Sequence record: NC_074635.1
Reading direction: 5' to 3' (one strand)
DNA: 34,025 bases
How positions within the stretch are numbered: the stretch's first letter is position 1; every line of letters starts with the position of its first letter. Position numbers and translations under genes: made by a program. A model generated the notes under the pieces. That model had not been told where the DNA came from. It made no database searches and saw only the letters and a program-made list of their open reading frames with translations. Shown here piece after piece: positions 1 to 34,025 of the stretch.

Positions 1-2
1 GC

Positions 3-114
3 TCCTAAATTCCTAAATTCCTAAATTAGGAATTTCCAAAATTCCAAATTTCCTAATTTCCTAACTTCCTAAATTCCAAAATTCCTAAGTTCCTAATTTC
101 CTAAGTTCCTAAAT
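3..114 (+). repeat. Terminal octamer array (TCCTAAAT-type), likely hairpin-end/replication origin region
   Basis: 14 in-phase 8-mers: 13 direct TCC(T/A)AAN(T) variants plus one inverted unit at 27-34. The reverse complement resembles the rudivirus terminal consensus AATTTAGGAATTTAGGAATTT. Confidence 0.85.
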
Positions 115-705
115 TACAATTTTTTGCATTTTTCAGGTAAATTGCATGAAAAATGAGAAATATTCAAACTTCCTAATTTACAATTAATCTGTCATTTTGC
201 GTAATTTGCACAATTTAGTAAAAATATTCTAAATTTGTAATTTCCTAAATTACAATAAAATGTACATTCTGTGCAATTTATTAAAATTGTAAAATTGTAA
301 AATTGGAAATGATAAATCTTTTCAATTTTTAATTGGAAATGTAGAAATATTTGTAAGTTTGTAAGTTTGTAAAAATTTAACATTTTTAGATTTTTATCTA
401 CCCAACTTGAAAATATATAATTATTTATATTTAGTTTTTTTCGACTTGGGTGAAAAAAATTGTAGTAAAATCTCGTGCGAAATATTAAAATTTACTAAAC
501 ATATTTCTAGTTTATATATAGTTATGCATATTGCACAATTTTAATACTTTCAGTCTAAACGATTTAGTATTTTTTTACTTTCAGTCTTTATGATATTGTA
601 AGATTGAAAGATTTATTAAATTCATTTTACAGTTTTTACGGTTGAAATGTAAGAAATTGAGGTTTTAGAAAGAAAAGTTTAAATAGTGCGAAGCCAAAAG
701 TTATT

Positions 706-825
706 ATGAGTAGCCAAGATTATGCTTCGCCATTTATTATCTATTATAAAAAAATATTAAAAAATTTTCAAATTATCAAATTAAAATATTTTCAATTTGC
801 GTTATTTTCCGTAAACGTAAAATAA
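706..825 (+). CDS. Possible 39-aa ITR-encoded peptide (or ncRNA), left copy
   Basis: Hand translation MSSQDYASPFIIYYKKILKNFQIIKLKYFQFALFSVNVK. Preceded by AGAAAGAAAAG-TTTAAATA (BRE/TATA-like, 667-685) and followed by a T-tract. Confidence 0.3.
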   Translation: MSSQDYASPFIIYYKKILKNFQIIKLKYFQFALFSVNVK

Positions 826-1254
826 CGCATTTTTTGTTTTTTTATTTTTTTGTTTTTAAACCTTAAACCGTTCTTTACTGAGGTTGAAAAAATCGCTCGG
901 TTGAAGAAATTTTATGTTGATAATGTTGAAAAGATTTTAAATAAATAAATGATATATGTTAATATATAATTATATTGCGTATATAGCTATATTATAATAT
1001 AGTATATAGTTATATTACATATTTATGTATATAGTTATATTTTAGTTTAAGCATATTGCACGTATATTATGCGTATATTGCGTACAAGTTATGTTATACT
1101 ATAATATTAGTATATTAGTATATTTTAGTTTGGGGGATATGCATAGGCATGCATATTTTATATTTTTTCAGGCGTTCTTACTTCTCGAATTCAAATCGTT
1201 TAGGTGAGATGAAAGAAAATGGAGAGAAAGAGAAGAAGAAAGAAAGTTAAGCAA

Positions 1255-1279
1255 GATAGAAAGATTTATATACTAGTTT
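1255..1279 (+). promoter_or_regulatory. Conserved early-type promoter, copy 1
   Basis: GATAGAAAGATTTATATACTAGTTT (BRE + TATA + YTWGTTT), with near-identical copies at 30741, 31689, 32265 and 32747. Confidence 0.8.
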
Positions 1280-1307
1280 GGCAAGATATAATATAGGGAT
1301 GAAAAAG

Positions 1308-1685
1308 ATGAAAGAGAAAGTTTCGTATAAAAATGTTCAAAAAGAAGTCCAAATAAAAGACACAATAAATATGATTGAAAAATTCTTAGATATTGAGTTT
1401 GCGATAGAGAGAGTAGATTTGTTAGATGTGCAAGACAATATAATAAAGATTGATTATGAGATTTACGGGATACATACACAATATACTTATGATGTAAGTC
1501 AAGAAATAGTCAAGAAGTTCAATCCAGATTATGTTAGTGGATATCCAGAAAGTGTTGAGCAATTTGAGTGGCTGATAGGTTCTGATGAAGTTAACGGTTA
1601 CAAGGTACAATATCTCAAAGTCTTGACAATTGATCATGTCAAACACGAGATATTGATGAAGAATCGTTTGTTAATCTTTAAGTAA
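1308..1685 (+). CDS. Hypothetical protein (~125 aa), candidate early anti-defence gene
   Basis: ORF track gives 1278..1685. The ATG at 1308 follows GGGATGAAAAAG, matching the AGGTGAAAAAG-ATG layout of a sister promoter. No family recognised. Confidence 0.75.
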   Translation: MKEKVSYKNVQKEVQIKDTINMIEKFLDIEFAIERVDLLDVQDNIIKIDYEIYGIHTQYTYDVSQEIVKKFNPDYVSGYPESVEQFEWLIGSDEVNGYKVQYLKVLTIDHVKHEILMKNRLLIFK

Positions 1686-2804: not shown

Positions 2805-4046
2805 ATGGTAGATAAAGAATTTACAAGAAAAAGTTCTGGAATTATAAAATCATTAAGTGCAAAAGATTTTTTTAATTTAAATTTACTTTACATGGGAATA
2901 ACTTCAGGAGCTAGTTATCCACTTCTAATTTATTTGTCTTTACCTTCTGCTAACGCTTTTCTATCAGTTTTAATTAGTATTTTGCTTAATCTTCCACTTT
3001 TAATAATGTATTATTATTTAACTCTGAAATTTCCGCAAAATGGTGGAGATTATAATTATATTTTAAAAGCTTTTAATCAAAAAATTGCCTCAATATTTGG
3101 TATAACAATATTATTAGTTTATGCATTTTCTCAGCCGATTTTATCAAGTTTAGAATTATCGCTAGGTTTAGACTTAAAAAACGTTCAATTTTGGATGACT
3201 GAAATCGTAATAATTGTTGGACTACTAATAGTTTTAAATCGTCAAGTTTTCAGATATATGCTATCACTTTTTACAATTTTACAACTTGTTCAAGTAGGAA
3301 TAATATTATATGTTTTATTAATTGCTCATAGTTTTTCAAATTTAGTTAATTTTAGTCTGCGAAGCGCAATGTCATTAGCAATTATTTATAGTTTTTCAAC
3401 ATTTATGTTTATAAATTCACCAAGTTATTTAGCTGGTGAAAGTAAAAATGCTAAAAAATCATTTTTATGGGGATATTTTGGCGCTTATTTTATCGTTGGG
3501 ATGTTAATAGCTTTAATTTCATTGCTTTCTCCATCAAATATTTACTTTATAGCTCTAATTAATTCAGTTTTGCATAGCTATAAAGTTTTAATAATCATAA
3601 ATATGATAGCTTCAACAACTTGGTATTTTTCATATCTTTTAATAAATCAAACGATTGTAAGTAGATTAATCCAACAAATGTCTTTTGACAATATTTTACA
3701 TTCAATGTTTACAAATATGAAATACGTATTATTTTTACTAATGTTACCGATAGTTACAGTTTTGAATTTTATAGAAAATTACTTAGGAATTACTGTAAAT
3801 TTTGCTACAGATGGCTTATTTTTCTTAATTTTAAATTACTTAATTGTTTCGCTTTCAGCTTTAAAGTTATCAAATGTTTTAACGTCTGATGCTAAAAAAA
3901 TAAAAATATTTTCAGTATTGACAATTATAAGTATAATCTTTCAAAGTGCTTATTATGAAATATTTTTAAGGTTTTCAACTCAAAACATTTGGATAATTTT
4001 TATATTTCCCGTAATTGCTTTAATTTATACAATGCTTAAAAGGTGA
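2805..4046 (+). CDS. APC-superfamily amino acid permease-like membrane protein
   Basis: About 11-12 hydrophobic segments. FPQNGGDY resembles the P-x-x-GG-x-Y motif and LAGESKNAKKS resembles the AEE-x-KNP-x-R motif of APC permeases. ATG at 2805 preferred over TTG at 2799. Confidence 0.75.
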   Translation: MVDKEFTRKSSGIIKSLSAKDFFNLNLLYMGITSGASYPLLIYLSLPSANAFLSVLISILLNLPLLIMYYYLTLKFPQNGGDYNYILKAFNQKIASIFGITILLVYAFSQPILSSLELSLGLDLKNVQFWMTEIVIIVGLLIVLNRQVFRYMLSLFTILQLVQVGIILYVLLIAHSFSNLVNFSLRSAMSLAIIYSFSTFMFINSPSYLAGESKNAKKSFLWGYFGAYFIVGMLIALISLLSPSNIYFIALINSVLHSYKVLIIINMIASTTWYFSYLLINQTIVSRLIQQMSFDNILHSMFTNMKYVLFLLMLPIVTVLNFIENYLGITVNFATDGLFFLILNYLIVSLSALKLSNVLTSDAKKIKIFSVLTIISIIFQSAYYEIFLRFSTQNIWIIFIFPVIALIYTMLKR

Positions 4047-7840: not shown

Positions 7841-7870
7841 AAATATGTAAGATTGCAAAGATTTACATAT
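7841..7870 (+). promoter_or_regulatory. TATA+GTAAGA promoter with ATATGTAA-N12-TTACATAT inverted repeat
   Basis: The inverted repeat spans TATA box to start codon. The same layout occurs at 10183-10209. Confidence 0.7.
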
Positions 7871-8387
7871 GATATTAAGTGATAAAACAATTAAAAAATT
7901 TATAGAAGAAAAAAAGTTAAAAATTGAACCACTTTACGAAGACACAATTCGTGAAAATGGCGTAGATCTCAGAATTGGTTACGAAATTTTGAGATTTAAA
8001 AAAGATGGTAATATTGTATTTTTAAATAGATTAGATAATTTGTACAAAAAAGAGACTGGAAAACATTTTTTAATTGCTCCGCATGAACATGTGCTTTTAA
8101 CAACACTTGAATATATAGAACTTCCAAATGATATTATCGGGTTAGTAAATCTTAGGTCAACGTTTGCTAGACTTGGCTTATTTATCCCACCTACAATAGT
8201 TGATGCTGGATTTAAAGGACAACTTACAATAGAATTAGTTGGTAGTGAAGTACCTATAATGCTTGATGCTGAAACTAGATTTTTACATTTAGTTTTCGCT
8301 AAAACTGATGAACCAGTTCAAAGACCTTATAGCGGAAAATATCAATATCAAGTAGGCGTGGTTGGAGCAAAAAAGGATGAGAAGTGA
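7869..8387 (+). CDS. dut: dUTPase / dCTP deaminase family
   Basis: MILSD, IRENGVDLRIG, NLRSTFARLGL, PPTIVDAGFKGQLTIEL and YSGKYQ match Sulfolobales Dcd and the SIRV dUTPase. Which activity it has cannot be told from sequence. Confidence 0.9.
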   Translation: MILSDKTIKKFIEEKKLKIEPLYEDTIRENGVDLRIGYEILRFKKDGNIVFLNRLDNLYKKETGKHFLIAPHEHVLLTTLEYIELPNDIIGLVNLRSTFARLGLFIPPTIVDAGFKGQLTIELVGSEVPIMLDAETRFLHLVFAKTDEPVQRPYSGKYQYQVGVVGAKKDEK

Positions 8388-8654: not shown

Positions 8655-9542
8655 TTATTTTTTTGAGTTTAATATTTCTCTAGCTGACTTGAAAGCTAAT
8701 TTCATTTCTTCTATAAGCGAGTCTTCTCCAAGTCTTTTTAAAGAGCGTAGATAGTAGTAATATTTTTCATTTATCATTTCTTCACTATATTGTAAAACCC
8801 AAACGTTTATTTTAGCTACATCCTTATAACTATCAAATTTAATTTCGTAAGGGAAGTTAGTTTTTTCCAAAAAATCAATTAATTCGTTTACTCGTTCTTT
8901 AAATTTTTTATTTGTAGGATGATAATCTCTTCCATCTGGGAAAATTACACGTCTAAGACCAGACAGATGAATATGTATAGATGTATCTAACTGGTTTGCA
9001 TCTAAAAAAAGCGTTTTTGTTTTCGCTCCTGGCATGCCTAAAACATGTAACCAATTTACCTTGCGTTTTACATAAACATAAAATGGCAAAGTATACAAAA
9101 AGACATCATTTTTGCTAGAAGCTACAAATCCTCCCATAGCTAAATAATTAGTATATTGTCTATAGAAGTCAATTGCAAAATCTAAATCACTTTTAGTATA
9201 CATGTGGACAATTGGAATAATTTTTTCAGCTTCTTCAAATTTTGTCCACAAAAATTCAAACCAATCAAAATTTCTATTATCAACATGGTCAAAAAGTGTA
9301 GGATAATCAAGGGAAAAAAACATTAATTTGTTAGATTGTTGAGCTAATTGTTTATATTTTTTTAATACTTCTTCTGGTTTAATTTGCATGCCTTGTAATA
9401 TTATTTGATATCCACCACTATCTATAAGCGTTTCATTTTTCCACCAAATTTCATCAATTTTTAATTGATTAATTAGGACTGGGAAATTTAAATCAAATAA
9501 AAATTCATATTTTCTGCCATATTCAAAGAAAATTTTCATCAA
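8655..9542 (-). CDS. tRNA-guanine transglycosylase (TGT/DpdA)-like TIM-barrel protein
   Basis: LIDSGGYQI, FSLDYP, PIVH, LHVLG and LDTS correspond to TGT-family motifs. No C-terminal Zn-binding CxCxxC. Confidence 0.8.
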   Translation of the reverse strand: MMKIFFEYGRKYEFLFDLNFPVLINQLKIDEIWWKNETLIDSGGYQIILQGMQIKPEEVLKKYKQLAQQSNKLMFFSLDYPTLFDHVDNRNFDWFEFLWTKFEEAEKIIPIVHMYTKSDLDFAIDFYRQYTNYLAMGGFVASSKNDVFLYTLPFYVYVKRKVNWLHVLGMPGAKTKTLFLDANQLDTSIHIHLSGLRRVIFPDGRDYHPTNKKFKERVNELIDFLEKTNFPYEIKFDSYKDVAKINVWVLQYSEEMINEKYYYYLRSLKRLGEDSLIEEMKLAFKSAREILNSKK

Positions 9543-9644
9543 AATGAGAAAATGACTTATTACACTTATAAATTTTACGATTGTTAAGATTTTTTCGTGT
9601 CGAATATTTAAATATCTAAAATATTATATTTTATTTGATCACAA

Positions 9645-11620: not shown

Positions 11621-12433
11621 ATGAAATTGTCAGATTTTGATGTTTTCGATTGTTTTTTTAGTGGCGGTAGAGATTCAGCGTTAACGTGTTATATTGCATA
11701 TAAAGTTTCTAAAGTATTAAATAAAAATTTTAGACTTATTCATATTGATACTAAAATAGCAATATCAGAAACTAAAGAATATGTAAAAAGATACGCAGAT
11801 TGGTTAAATGCAGAGTTAAAAATAGTACAAACACAATATGATTATTTTGAATTTGTAAAAAAATATGGATATCCTTCAGTAATTAAAAATAGGTGGTGTT
11901 GGCGATTTTTAAAACAAGAGCCATTATATCAATTTAAAATCGAAGAAATAAAAGAAAAAATAAATCCTTTATGGATCCTAGGTATTAGGAGAAATGAAAG
12001 TTTATTTAGACTAGAAAATTATGGAAAAATAACTAATACATTAAAACGAGGTATGATTAAGAATTTACATGTAGTAGAATGGCTACCAATATTATATTTA
12101 TCAGGTGAAGAAGTTGATAGACTTATAAATAAATTTAAAATTCCAATAAATCCCGTATGGAAAAAAATTGGAATAAGTGGAGAATGTCTATGCCTAGCGG
12201 GGACAACAAAAAAGAAATTAGAAGCGCTTTTTATAAATTATCCAGATATTGCTCAAAAGTTTTATGAATTTGATAAATCTTTAATACCTAAAAGAGAAGG
12301 TAATTTGATTCCATTAGGTCTATTAAATGATAAAAAACGATTGCATAAATTTATTGAAGAAATACAAAATAAGAAAAACCAACCTACTATAGATGAATAT
12401 TTTGCATGTCAGGGTGCATGTTTTAATTTGTAA
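11621..12433 (+). CDS. PAPS-reductase/DndC-like PP-loop protein
   Basis: FSGGRDS (PP-loop), HIDT, RWCWRFLKQEP, LGIRRNES, ISGECLC and C-terminal CQGAC. Confidence 0.85.
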   Translation: MKLSDFDVFDCFFSGGRDSALTCYIAYKVSKVLNKNFRLIHIDTKIAISETKEYVKRYADWLNAELKIVQTQYDYFEFVKKYGYPSVIKNRWCWRFLKQEPLYQFKIEEIKEKINPLWILGIRRNESLFRLENYGKITNTLKRGMIKNLHVVEWLPILYLSGEEVDRLINKFKIPINPVWKKIGISGECLCLAGTTKKKLEALFINYPDIAQKFYEFDKSLIPKREGNLIPLGLLNDKKRLHKFIEEIQNKKNQPTIDEYFACQGACFNL

Positions 12434-32412: not shown

Positions 32413-32718
32413 TTAATATCTTGAGAAATAAATATAATCTGAATCTTCAGTATAAAGTCTCTTTGAAAATCTATAATAATTTTCTACTAAAATATCTTGA
32501 ATTCTATCAAAATTAATTTTGTTTGCATAGAAACTTAAAGAGATATTTGCTACATTTACAACAATACTAATTGACCAAACATTTATTTGCACTTCTGAAG
32601 GTTTCTTAGACTTCAATAATTTTTCTAACTTTTTGAAATTTTTTTCGTCTTGTTCTTTCTGCCAAGAAAAATAAGGTGTGTAATCAAAAACTATTGGGCT
32701 TTCAACTTTCTCTTTCAT
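32413..32718 (-). CDS. Hypothetical protein (~101 aa), candidate early anti-defence gene
   Basis: Starts inside the right ITR (MKEKV) and continues in unique sequence. Confidence 0.75.
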   Translation of the reverse strand: MKEKVESPIVFDYTPYFSWQKEQDEKNFKKLEKLLKSKKPSEVQINVWSISIVVNVANISLSFYANKINFDRIQDILVENYYRFSKRLYTEDSDYIYFSRY

Positions 32719-32746
32719 CTTTTTCATCCCTATATTATATCTTGCC

Positions 32747-32771
32747 AAACTAGTATATAAATCTTTCTATC
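32747..32771 (-). promoter_or_regulatory. Conserved early-type promoter, copy 5 (ITR mirror of copy 1)
   Basis: GATAGAAAGATTTATATACTAGTTT. Confidence 0.8.
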
Positions 32772-33200
32772 TTGCTTAACTTTCTTTCTTCTTCTCTTTC
32801 TCTCCATTTTCTTTCATCTCACCTAAACGATTTGAATTCGAGAAGTAAGAACGCCTGAAAAAATATAAAATATGCATGCCTATGCATATCCCCCAAACTA
32901 AAATATACTAATATACTAATATTATAGTATAACATAACTTGTACGCAATATACGCATAATATACGTGCAATATGCTTAAACTAAAATATAACTATATACA
33001 TAAATATGTAATATAACTATATACTATATTATAATATAGCTATATACGCAATATAATTATATATTAACATATATCATTTATTTATTTAAAATCTTTTCAA
33101 CATTATCAACATAAAATTTCTTCAACCGAGCGATTTTTTCAACCTCAGTAAAGAACGGTTTAAGGTTTAAAAACAAAAAAATAAAAAAACAAAAAATGCG

Positions 33201-33320
33201 TTATTTTACGTTTACGGAAAATAACGCAAATTGAAAATATTTTAATTTGATAATTTGAAAATTTTTTAATATTTTTTTATAATAGATAATAAATGGCGAA
33301 GCATAATCTTGGCTACTCAT
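33201..33320 (-). CDS. Possible 39-aa ITR-encoded peptide, right copy
   Basis: Mirror of 706..825. Confidence 0.3.
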   Translation of the reverse strand: MSSQDYASPFIIYYKKILKNFQIIKLKYFQFALFSVNVK

Positions 33321-33911
33321 AATAACTTTTGGCTTCGCACTATTTAAACTTTTCTTTCTAAAACCTCAATTTCTTACATTTCAACCGTAAAAACTGTAAA
33401 ATGAATTTAATAAATCTTTCAATCTTACAATATCATAAAGACTGAAAGTAAAAAAATACTAAATCGTTTAGACTGAAAGTATTAAAATTGTGCAATATGC
33501 ATAACTATATATAAACTAGAAATATGTTTAGTAAATTTTAATATTTCGCACGAGATTTTACTACAATTTTTTTCACCCAAGTCGAAAAAAACTAAATATA
33601 AATAATTATATATTTTCAAGTTGGGTAGATAAAAATCTAAAAATGTTAAATTTTTACAAACTTACAAACTTACAAATATTTCTACATTTCCAATTAAAAA
33701 TTGAAAAGATTTATCATTTCCAATTTTACAATTTTACAATTTTAATAAATTGCACAGAATGTACATTTTATTGTAATTTAGGAAATTACAAATTTAGAAT
33801 ATTTTTACTAAATTGTGCAAATTACGCAAAATGACAGATTAATTGTAAATTAGGAAGTTTGAATATTTCTCATTTTTCATGCAATTTACCTGAAAAATGC
33901 AAAAAATTGTA

Positions 33912-34023
33912 ATTTAGGAACTTAGGAAATTAGGAACTTAGGAATTTTGGAATTTAGGAAGTTAGGAAATTAGGAAATTTGGAATTTTGGAAATTCCTAA
34001 TTTAGGAATTTAGGAATTTAGGA
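33912..34023 (-). repeat. Terminal octamer array, right end
   Basis: Mirror of 3..114. Confidence 0.85.
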
Positions 34024-34025
34024 GC

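What the first reader, a model, noticed from the sequence alone, without database searches (positions are those of the whole stretch)
8655..9542. TGT/DpdA-like transglycosylase: possible deazaguanine modification of viral DNA
Seen: catalytic-type Asp motifs (DSGGYQ, LDYP, LDTS) and HVLG are intact; the Zn-binding C-terminal Cys motif of cellular TGTs is missing; no folE/queD/queE/queC genes are present. Known: DpdA paralogues of TGT exchange guanine for 7-deazaguanine bases in phage DNA and block restriction; Sulfolobales make preQ0 for archaeosine; a TGT-like ORF occurs in SIRVs. Inference: the enzyme could use host preQ0 to modify viral DNA, or alternatively alter host tRNA.
Basis: partly seen in the sequence, partly recalled or inferred. 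Interest (0 to 1): 0.65.

Follow-up and report, generated by a model that had tools for sequence, protein, structure and literature searches.

The report
Rudivirus DpdA-like guanine-swapping enzyme
This archaeal virus has a stripped-down relative of the enzymes that swap guanine for 7-deazaguanine bases; it most likely marks the virus's own DNA against host defences, an idea already published for its close relatives but never tested at the bench.

Summary
The window is the complete genome of Sulfolobales Beppu rod-shaped virus 1 (SBRV1, MK064565). The finding is gene gp19 (8655-9539, minus strand, 294 aa), annotated 'putative queuine tRNA-ribosyltransferase'.

All quoted motifs are present, the protein has no cysteine, and the virus has no folE, queD, queE or queC.

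A high-confidence model (pLDDT 96) is a TGT-type barrel, with Z 21.7 to archaeal TGT. The three catalytic aspartates are invariant in the family. The base-reading residue is the His seen in DNA-acting DpdA enzymes, not the Gln of tRNA TGTs. The zinc motif is also missing from proven phage DpdA1. In a tree the family joins a clade with phage DpdA1 (support 97/86), outside arcTGT, DpdA2 and bacterial TGT.

The closest named relative is STSV2_15 (37% identity), the published 'DpdA' of a virus whose DNA carries 7-carboxy-7-deazaguanine. Hutinet et al. 2019 already list the SIRV and SRV orthologues as lone DpdA genes. The reading is therefore sound but not new, and no rudivirus DNA has been tested.

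Less known: about a third of the Sulfolobaceae species genomes searched carry the same gene, paired with DUF5591 in every locus examined and beside HerA/NurA-type genes in most. Two earlier notes of this scan, on STSV2 and STSV4, reported the same neighbourhood.

The parts
8655..9539 (-). SBRV1 gp19 (ORF19-294): a single-domain, zinc-less transglycosylase of the TGT superfamily, DpdA-like
   Evidence: ORF and annotation. PHROG 887 E=1e-34. AF2 model pLDDT 96.4. VIA Z 21.7 to ArcTGT 1iq8 over 258 residues. Family alignment.
9405..9422 (-). DSGGYQ motif. D40 is the predicted general acid/base Asp and Y44 the aromatic residue that stacks on the base.
   Evidence: Invariant in A1. Aligns with DSGGFQ of E. 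coli TGT, DSGAYQ of arcTGT and DSGAFS of 9g DpdA1. The role is inferred from bDpdA D95/F99 (PMC10164549).
9300..9311 (-). LDYP motif. D78 is the predicted base-recognition Asp.
   Evidence: D is present in 105 of 105 aligned superfamily members. Equivalent to bDpdA D130 (PMC10164549).
9204..9215 (-). PIVH motif. H112 is a DpdA-type His at the position where tRNA TGTs have Gln.
   Evidence: Aligns with PCFH of 9g and CAjan DpdA1 and PIFH of nt-1 DpdA2, against PIQ or IIQ in arcTGT and E. coli TGT. In the HMM alignments, DpdA 7ui4 has His at this column while 1iq8, 2ash and QTRT1 have Gln.
9129..9134 (-). G136-G137, the glycine pair of the substrate pocket
   Evidence: Invariant in A1. Aligns with the GG of bacterial TGT and DpdA1.
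9036..9047 (-). HVLG motif (H165, G168)
   Evidence: H in 103 of 105 and G in 105 of 105 aligned members.
8979..8990 (-). LDTS motif. D185 is the predicted catalytic nucleophile.
   Evidence: D in 105 of 105. Aligns with the FDC/FDS nucleophile motif of TGTs. Equivalent to bDpdA D256 (PMC10164549).
8796..8864 (-). Remnant of the zinc-binding segment (residues 226-248). All four metal ligands are replaced; the following Asn (N245) is kept.
   Evidence: Aligns with CSCPVCSKY...AIHN of arcTGT and CDCYTCRNY...TIHN of E. coli TGT. Motif counts.
9566..9572 (-). TATA-like box TTTATAA, 33 nt upstream of the ATG, in the 105-bp divergent spacer shared with the capsid gene. It is a probable promoter of a nearly leaderless mRNA.
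   Evidence: Read directly from the sequence. Its function is inferred, not tested.

Best explanation
gp19 is an active base-exchange enzyme of the DpdA type. After replication it flips a guanine out of double-stranded viral DNA. [quoted passage not shown] A free 7-deazaguanine base made by the host (preQ0, or possibly its precursor CDG) then binds against D78 and H112 and is joined to the sugar. The virus makes none of the base itself and lives off the archaeosine pathway of Sulfolobaceae. The purpose is accessory: marking a fraction of the viral guanines so that host nucleases or other DNA-sensing defences fail. Shown here: the fold, the conserved catalytic residues, the family relationships, the absence of precursor genes in the virus and their presence in hosts. 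Inferred: DNA as the substrate, the identity of the base, and the protective role.
For: - Fold: TGT barrel, Z 21.7 over 258 of 294 residues, from a pLDDT-96 model.
- Residues: D40, D78, D185, G136-G137, H165 and G168 are invariant across homologues about 43% identical and align with the catalytic motifs of known enzymes.
- H112: it matches the His of bDpdA (7ui4), DpdA1 and DpdA2. Every tRNA-acting TGT in hand has Gln at that column.
- Zinc motif: absent in the family, exactly as in phage DpdA1 and DpdA2 (0 of 16 and 0 of 2), so its loss does not imply inactivity.
- Tree: a careful ML tree gives FAM 100/100 and a joint clade with 9g, CAjan and Dp-1 DpdA1 at 97/86; arcTGT lies outside the whole group (90/89), with DpdA2 and E. 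coli TGT also outside the joint clade.
- Orthologue: 37% identity to STSV2_15, the 'DpdA' of a virus whose DNA holds dCDG at 149 per 10^6 nt (PMC10516641).
- Published listing: the SIRV and SRV orthologues are listed as DpdA (PMC6884629, Supplementary Data 1).
- Gene neighbours are nucleotide or DNA enzymes in three virus groups: a dCTP deaminase-like gene in SBRV1 and in viral contig L021, and thymidylate synthase in STSV2.
- Host supply: QueC in 46 of 47 Sulfolobaceae genomes.
- Accessory role: the SIRV2 orthologue gp13 was lost spontaneously, and the mutants lacking it, up to the last further deletion (gp37), propagated as efficiently as wild type in CRISPR-null laboratory hosts, as expected of a conditional anti-defence gene (PMC6315595).
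- The virus has no tRNA genes.
Against: - No rudivirus DNA has been analysed for modified bases, and no member of this subfamily has been assayed.
- The one measured relative (STSV2) carries the modification at only 0.04% of its guanines and with an unexpected base. Its authors could not explain the source, and STSV2 also has an ArcS-like partner that SBRV1 lacks.
- Direct sequence searches miss every curated TGT or DpdA model: Pfam, NCBIfam, PADLOC and PDB.
- The best structural match is a tRNA enzyme.
- The His signature is shared by the whole uncharacterised radiation of short TGT-like proteins (96 of 105), so it is not proof of DNA specificity.
- Bacterial DpdA needs the ATPase DpdB (PMC10164549), and no such partner is evident here.
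Confidence: 0.55

Rival explanations
1. It is what the database calls it: a tRNA (or other RNA) guanine transglycosylase that remodels host tRNA during infection, for example by inserting a 7-deazaguanine at a new position to bias translation.
For: Best structural matches are ArcTGT and QTRT1. The relatives' best NCBIfam hit is TIGR00432 arcTGT. It is annotated as queuine tRNA-ribosyltransferase. From general knowledge, arcTGT lacking its PUA domain can still act on tRNA.
Against: It has His where all tRNA TGTs in hand have Gln. It lacks the zinc subdomain and every C-terminal tRNA-binding domain, being 294 aa against about 500. Hosts already have a canonical arcTGT. The virus has no tRNA genes. 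The tree places it with DNA-acting DpdA1, away from arcTGT. Phage 9g DpdA does not complement tgt (PMC6884629).
Confidence: 0.15
2. It acts on DNA but does something other than installing a 7-deazaguanine on the viral genome. It might exchange a different base, strip a host-installed mark, or modify host DNA so as to disarm a host modification-dependent system.
For: STSV2 shows an unexpected base at trace level. Rudiviruses lack the DUF5591 partner that accompanies every cellular and STSV copy. The gene always co-occurs with a virus-encoded permease of unknown substrate.
Against: The pocket residues that read the guanine or 7-deazaguanine Watson-Crick edge (D78, H112, GG) are kept. No precedent exists in the superfamily for other bases.
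Confidence: 0.15
3. It is a decayed, catalytically dead remnant or a purely structural or binding protein.
For: It has lost the zinc site and shrunk to 294 aa, it gives no hit to curated family models, and it is dispensable in SIRV2.
Against: All catalytic and pocket residues are invariant over homologues at about 43% identity, in viruses and cells alike. The barrel model is compact and confident. Proven DpdA1 enzymes lack the zinc site too.
Confidence: 0.04

Closest known systems
STSV2_15 / STSV1 ORF18, the 'DpdA' of Sulfolobus spindle viruses (Hutinet 2019, 2023)
   Same: Same subfamily: 37% identity over 86% of the protein, inside the 100/100 FAM clade. Same motifs and zinc-less form. The host is also a Sulfolobaceae. 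Neither virus has preQ0 genes.
   Different: STSV2_15 overlaps a DUF5591/ArcS-C1 gene (ArcS2), which SBRV1 and SIRV2 lack. STSV2 DNA has been measured (dCDG at 0.04% of G); SBRV1 DNA has not.
SIRV2 gp13 (ORF310) and the other SIRV and SRV orthologues, listed as lone DpdA genes
   Same: Orthologues at 40-45% identity. SBRV1 pairs with SRV (100/99) inside a clade of the rudiviral genes and related metagenomic sequences. In both SRV and SBRV1 the gene diverges from the capsid gene.
   Different: In SIRVs the gene sits near a genome end, next to the permease gene. In SBRV1 it is in the central block and the permease gene is 4.6 kb away. SBRV1 is not in the published lists.
Phage DpdA1 (9g, CAjan, Dp-1), proven to insert preQ0 into DNA
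   Same: About 300 aa, one domain, no zinc motif, Asp triad, His at the base-reading position. Joint clade with support 97/86.
   Different: It is not inside the DpdA1 clade; several uncharacterised lineages intervene. Direct HMM similarity is only 16-21 bits. The DpdA1 phages used here as references (9g, CAjan, Dp-1) carry their own preQ0 genes, though Hutinet 2019 also lists lone-DpdA phages.
Bacterial DpdA (Salmonella Montevideo, PDB 7UI4)
   Same: Same catalytic scheme, with D95/D130/H181/D256 equivalent to D40/D78/H112/D185.
   Different: bDpdA keeps the zinc site, has a large Ins8 insertion (436-aa chain), needs DpdB and ATP, and belongs to a restriction-modification cluster. NF041059 and PADLOC models do not hit gp19.
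Archaeosine tRNA-guanine transglycosylase (P. horikoshii, PDB 1IQ8)
   Same: Best structural match: Z 21.7, rmsd 3.5 A, 258 residues, covering the catalytic barrel.
   Different: ArcTGT has Gln rather than His, a zinc site and three C-terminal tRNA-binding domains. It lies outside the clade in the tree.

Membership tests
TGT superfamily (catalytic barrel) | (beta/alpha)8 TGT-type barrel | tested here: met
   AF2 model pLDDT 96.4. VIA Z 21.7 (1iq8), 20.9 (QTRT1) and about 19.5 (Z. mobilis TGT), covering model residues 1-274.
TGT superfamily (catalytic barrel) | Three active-site aspartates (acid/base, base recognition, nucleophile) | tested here: met
   D40, D78 and D185 are invariant in A1. 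In the 105-sequence alignment D is present in 103, 105 and 105 sequences respectively.
TGT superfamily (catalytic barrel) | Match to Pfam PF01702 above its cut-off | tested here: not met
   gp19 itself gives no hit. The link is only transitive: 50 of 86 distant relatives hit PF01702. PHROG 887 hits at 1e-34.
TGT superfamily (catalytic barrel) | Structural zinc site CxCxxC...H | tested here: not met
   No cysteine in gp19. Motif present in 0 of 13 family members, against 5 of 5 arcTGT and 1 of 1 bacterial TGT.
DpdA (DNA-guanine transglycosylases in general) | His, not Gln, at the base-recognition position (bDpdA H181) | tested here: met
   H112 aligns with the His of 7ui4, 9g, CAjan, Dp-1 and nt-1. 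arcTGT, E. coli TGT, T. maritima TGT and QTRT1 have Gln.
DpdA (DNA-guanine transglycosylases in general) | Inserts a 7-deazaguanine base into DNA | not testable with these tools
   Needs LC-MS/MS of virion DNA or an enzyme assay. The only indirect support is dCDG in STSV2 DNA (PMC10516641).
DpdA (DNA-guanine transglycosylases in general) | A source of 7-deazaguanine base, from the virus's own genes or from the host | tested here: met
   The virus has none. QueC is in 46 of 47 Sulfolobaceae genomes, and arcTGT plus a Gat-QueC-sized QueC frame are in 5 of 5. The host of SBRV1 itself is unknown.
Bacterial DpdA (NF041059; PADLOC Dpd) | Match to the curated models; DpdB/DpdC partners | tested here: not met
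   No NCBIfam or PADLOC hit. No ParB-like partner was noted in the annotation.
Phage DpdA1 | Placement inside the clade of 9g, CAjan and Dp-1 | tested here: not met
   It shares a joint clade at 97/86, but several uncharacterised lineages lie between, and FAM is its own 100/100 clade.
Phage DpdA2 | Similarity to or clade with nt-1 and VH7D DpdA2 | tested here: not met
   The A1 profile scores 1-3 bits against them, and they lie outside the joint clade.
DpdA4 (archaeal-virus DpdA, DUF6610) | Match to PF20314 | tested here: not met
   HVTV-1 hits at 2.9e-58; SBRV1 and SIRV2 have no match at E<=1.
DpdA3 | Similarity to phiST CGPG_00065 or the Campylobacter phage proteins | tested here: inconclusive
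   Only a weak structural hit to a phiST protein (M4SLA5, E 2.4e-3, TM 0.38). No sequence test was run.
Archaeosine tRNA-guanine transglycosylase (TIGR00432) | Model match, C-terminal C1-C3/PUA domains, Gln and zinc site | tested here: not met
   No NCBIfam hit. gp19 is 294 aa, against about 500-aa host arcTGT. It has His instead of Gln and no zinc motif.
Split ArcS (TGT-like N-terminal domain plus DUF5591 C1 domain) | A DUF5591 partner gene | tested here: not met
   DUF5591 is absent from SBRV1 but present beside the STSV and all examined cellular copies. ArcS N-terminal domain sequences were not compared directly.

The most novel reading that the evidence does not exclude
The chromosomal form of this gene may be the modification half of an undescribed archaeal system like the bacterial Dpd restriction-modification system. 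In many Sulfolobaceae it sits in a row: TGT-like gene, DUF5591, HerA-like ATPase, a roughly 1000-aa protein of unknown fold, a roughly 220-aa protein, and a NurA-like nuclease. On this reading rudiviruses such as SBRV1 carry an orphan copy of the modification enzyme so that their DNA bears the host's 'self' mark and escapes that system.
Probability: 0.25. Interest if true: 0.75.

Novelty: new member of a known kind. Interest (0 to 1): 0.4.

Why it matters
If rudiviral DNA carries 7-deazaguanines, it would extend this anti-restriction chemistry to a whole family of hyperthermophilic archaeal viruses whose DNA is packed in A-form. It would also show a virus living off its host's archaeosine pathway. 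The test is easy because SIRV2 is a laboratory model and a spontaneous mutant lacking the orthologue already exists. The host-chromosome module beside HerA/NurA genes hints at a matching, undescribed archaeal defence system. For SBRV1 itself the result is mainly a better annotation: DpdA-like DNA-guanine transglycosylase rather than queuine tRNA-ribosyltransferase.

Tried and rejected
- Direct searches with gp19 alone found nothing useful in Pfam, NCBIfam, PADLOC or PDB sequences. A profile of close homologues also missed PDB.
- The first AF2 model, from a shallow alignment, was mediocre (pLDDT 73) and gave only TM of about 0.4 to TGTs. It was replaced by the deep-alignment model.
- No whole genome is held for the window, so 'own' searches failed. 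The phage record was searched through a locus handle instead.
- DpdA4 membership was rejected.
- I tested whether the SBRV1 PAPS-reductase-like gene (11621-12433) is a QueC-like partner. It shows no similarity to the PP-loop gene beside distant relative P0065. Its homologues occur in viruses without the TGT-like gene, and no other rudivirus record carries one. The idea was dropped.
- The roughly 1000-aa and 220-aa proteins of the cellular row have no meaningful Pfam or PADLOC domain.
- The quick tree put FAM directly beside DpdA1. The careful tree shows intervening lineages, so 'sister of DpdA1' was softened to 'same clade'.
- The supplements of the 2023 paper are not held, so the DpdA subfamily its authors assign to STSV2 could not be read.
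- Sequencing-read tools and complex prediction were not used. Short-read data cannot show this modification, and no binding claim is made.
- bDpdA and ArcS N-terminal domain sequences could not be put in the tree, because no referenced sequence was in hand.

Full report
**What the window is.** The 34,025-base window is identical to the complete genome of Sulfolobales Beppu rod-shaped virus 1 (SBRV1, MK064565/NC_074635; Rudiviridae, Japarudivirus). SBRV1 was found in enrichment sample J14 from a Beppu hot spring and is targeted by 521 distinct CRISPR spacers of varied Sulfolobales (PMC6858448). The finding is gene gp19 (ORF19-294), deposited as 'putative queuine tRNA-ribosyltransferase'. The record and all homologues begin one codon later, at the ATG at 9539. 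A TATA-like TTTATAA lies 33 nt upstream, in the 105-bp spacer shared with the divergently transcribed capsid gene.

**Check of the observation.**
- DSGGYQ at residues 40-45
- LDYP at 77-80
- HVLG at 165-168
- LDTS at 184-187

The protein has no cysteine at all. In 29 homologues that share about 43% identity with gp19, D40, S41, G42, G43, D78, H112, G136, G137, H165, G168, D185 and N245 are invariant. Purifying selection on a catalytic site is therefore plain. Searches of the whole SBRV1 record for QueC, QueD/PTPS, FolE and radical-SAM families gave nothing at E<=1. The same was true for SIRV2 and STSV2.

**Fold and family.** gp19 alone hits no curated model in Pfam, NCBIfam or PADLOC and no PDB sequence. 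It does hit PHROG 887, 'queuine tRNA-ribosyltransferase', at 1e-34.

A profile search of 1.8 billion representatives found 150 relatives. Of 86 that were aligned:
- 50 hit Pfam TGT
- 65 hit the arcTGT model
- 35 hit the DpdA model, all below the equivalog cut-offs

That broader profile hits P. horikoshii ArcTGT (7.7e-39), Salmonella DpdA 7UI4 (6.8e-21) and bacterial and eukaryotic TGTs in the PDB.

With the deep alignment, AlphaFold gives a model at pLDDT 96.4 and pTM 0.92. Its best structural matches are:
- ArcTGT: Z 21.7, rmsd 3.5 A, 258 residues
- QTRT1: Z 20.9
- Z. mobilis TGT: Z about 19.5

These matches span model residues 1-274. gp19 is a bare TGT catalytic barrel.

**Residue-level comparison.**
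- D40, D78 and D185 align with the acid/base, base-recognition and nucleophile aspartates of TGTs and of bacterial DpdA (D95, D130, D256 in PMC10164549).
- At the second base-reading position gp19 has H112. Bacterial DpdA (H181), phage DpdA1 (9g, CAjan, Dp-1) and DpdA2 (nt-1) also have His there.
- ArcTGT, E. coli and T. maritima TGT and mammalian QTRT1 have Gln at that position.
- The segment that holds CxCxxC...H in arcTGT and bacterial TGT is still alignable in gp19 (residues 226-248), but all four ligands are replaced.
- The same loss is seen in 0 of 16 members of the DpdA1 clade and 0 of 2 DpdA2, against 5 of 5 arcTGT and E. coli TGT.

The missing zinc site is therefore a shared trait of proven DNA-acting phage enzymes and not a sign of decay. 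One caveat applies: the His is shared by 96 of 105 aligned sequences, most of them uncharacterised. It fits DpdA but does not prove DNA specificity.

**Phylogeny.** The careful ML tree used 91 sequences and 308 columns, with 14 long-branch rows left out. The references were DpdA1 of 9g, CAjan and Dp-1, DpdA2 of nt-1 and VH7D, five Sulfolobaceae arcTGTs and E. coli TGT.
- The viral and cellular Sulfolobales family (FAM) is one clade, support 100/100.
- SBRV1 pairs with SRV (100/99). The rudiviral genes, with two related metagenomic sequences, form a clade nested among STSV2 and chromosomal copies.
- FAM joins a group of roughly 325-aa archaeal chromosomal proteins at 100/100.
- After several uncharacterised lineages, it forms a joint clade with phage DpdA1 at 97/86.
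- arcTGT lies outside the whole group (90/89), and DpdA2 and E. coli TGT also lie outside the joint clade.
- It is not DpdA4: PF20314 hits HVTV-1 at 2.9e-58 but neither SBRV1 nor SIRV2.

The family is best described as a separate Sulfolobales branch of the DpdA1-like radiation.

**What is already published.**
- Hutinet et al. 2019 (PMC6884629) report 12 Ligamenvirales and 2 Bicaudaviridae with a DpdA homologue.
- Their Supplementary Data 1 lists SIRV1-5, SIRV7-11, variant XX and SRV in the DpdA column with no other pathway gene, and STSV1 and STSV2 with DpdA plus ArcS.
- Their Supplementary Table 2 lists FolE, QueD, QueE, Gat-QueC and ArcTGT of S. islandicus.
- Hutinet et al. 2023 (PMC10516641) measured dCDG at 149 per 10^6 nt (0.04% of G) in STSV2 DNA and could not explain its source.

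gp19 is 37% identical to that STSV2 protein, STSV2_15, which overlaps the DUF5591 gene STSV2_16. SBRV1 itself is not listed, and I found no report of modified-base analysis of any rudivirus DNA.

**Context that bears on function.**
- Neighbours of gp19 in SBRV1 are a dCTP deaminase/dUTPase-like gene, a Cas4-like nuclease, an ATPase and an SSB.
- A related viral contig has the dCTP deaminase-like gene directly upstream. In STSV2 a thymidylate synthase gene lies just upstream.
- The virus has no tRNA genes.
- Among rudiviruses the gene is present in SBRV1, all SIRVs and SRV. It was not found in ARV1-3, MRV1, SSRV1 or SMRV1.
- In SIRV2 the orthologue gp13 and the adjacent permease gp14 were lost spontaneously. 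The mutants lacking them, up to the last further deletion (gp37), propagated as efficiently as wild type in CRISPR-null hosts (PMC6315595). This is what one expects of a conditional, host-dependent gene.
- Host supply is plausible. QueC, in 465-505-aa frames the size of Gat-QueC, is in 46 of 47 species genomes of the family that holds Acidianus manzaensis, taken here as Sulfolobaceae.

**The cellular counterpart.** The gene is not only viral.
- FAM-type copies lie in the chromosomes of Acidianus manzaensis, A. sulfidivorans and A. hospitalis, Stygiolobus, Ca. Aramenus and other Sulfolobaceae. At least 15 of the 47 species genomes of that family carry one.
- Five such genomes each also hold a canonical arcTGT of about 500 aa and a Gat-QueC-sized QueC frame. 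The short gene is therefore an extra paralogue, not the tRNA enzyme.
- Each of the five has exactly one DUF5591 gene, always next to the short TGT-like gene.
- In seven loci the pair is followed by a HerA-like ATPase, a roughly 1000-aa protein, a roughly 220-aa protein and a NurA-like nuclease; one of these contigs is cut short after the large protein.
- That NurA is a divergent paralogue among the 3-6 matches per genome.
- A more distant archaeal relative also pairs DUF5591 and the TGT-like gene near a DUF87 ATPase and a 1428-aa protein.
- The two large unknown proteins have no recognisable domain.

This layout recalls the bacterial Dpd modification-restriction cluster, but nothing here shows restriction. 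Two earlier notes of this scan (s1-165247 on STSV2, s1-165276 on STSV4) reported the same neighbourhood. I reached it independently and confirmed it.

**Most likely mechanism.** gp19 exchanges guanine in duplex viral DNA for a host-made 7-deazaguanine base by the double-displacement chemistry of TGT and DpdA. D185 is the nucleophile, D40 the acid/base, and D78, H112 and the GG pair read the base. The likely purpose is protection from host nucleases. I put this at about 0.55. The fold, the residues, the relationships and the gene content are shown. DNA as substrate, the base and the benefit are inferred.

The rivals are:
- action on tRNA (0.15)
- a different DNA-directed reaction, such as another base or removal of a mark (0.15)
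- a dead protein (0.04)

**Verdict.** gp19 is a new member of a known kind. Interest is moderate, because the decisive experiment is simple and still undone, and because the host-chromosome module may be a new archaeal defence system.

Noticed in passing
window 2805-4046 (+), ORF9-413: A virus-encoded 'amino acid transporter' with no Pfam hit at E<=0.05. It is present in every rudivirus that has the TGT-like gene, adjacent to it in SIRVs and SRV, and also in ARV2 and SSRV1, which lack the TGT-like gene. It might import the base substrate; this is pure speculation.
   Followed up: partly
window 11621-12433 (+), ORF23-270: A PAPS-reductase/PP-loop-like gene (PF01507, 2.8e-15) found in no other rudivirus record of the phage collection. 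Homologues occur in SMV2, ATSV, haloarchaeal tailed viruses and actinophages. No link to the TGT-like gene was found.
   Followed up: partly
window 1-1322 and 32704-34025: Inverted terminal repeats of 1322 nt, 100% complementary, as expected for a linear rudivirus genome.
   Followed up: no
L019:10001-17735 (Acidianus manzaensis CP020477); also L007, L008, L009, L012, L016, L020: A chromosomal gene row: short TGT-like gene, DUF5591, HerA-like ATPase, a roughly 1000-aa unknown, a roughly 220-aa unknown, and a NurA paralogue (L016 is cut short after the large protein). It is conserved across Sulfolobaceae, in genomes that also have arcTGT and a Gat-QueC-sized QueC frame. It is a candidate Dpd-like modification-restriction island.
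   Followed up: partly
L005, L006, L010, L014 (Streptomyces gamaensis, Planomonospora alba, Paenochrobactrum glaciei, Nocardioides koreensis assemblies): SIRV-like copies of this gene sit on short contigs of culture-collection bacterial assemblies. This is almost certainly contamination with rudivirus DNA, and it explains the source name 'MULTISPECIES ... [Bacteria]' on cluster P0007.
   Followed up: no
L023:8001-8885 (Stygiolobus rod-shaped virus FM164764): PMC6315595 states that gp13-gp14 are absent from SRV. SRV nevertheless encodes a clear homologue (37% identity, divergent from its capsid gene) and a partial permease match.
   Followed up: yes
Sulfolobaceae genomes G001-G179: Hutinet 2023 says the STSV2 host lacks all Q/G+ pathway genes (data not shown there). 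QueC is nonetheless present in 46 of 47 species genomes of the family, so that statement deserves a re-check for S. tengchongensis.
   Followed up: partly
window 7869-8387 (+), gp17: A dCTP deaminase/dUTPase-like gene (PF22769, 1.6e-32) lies two genes from gp19. The same family sits directly upstream of the TGT-like gene in viral contig L021 and about 1.6 kb away in SRV.
   Followed up: no
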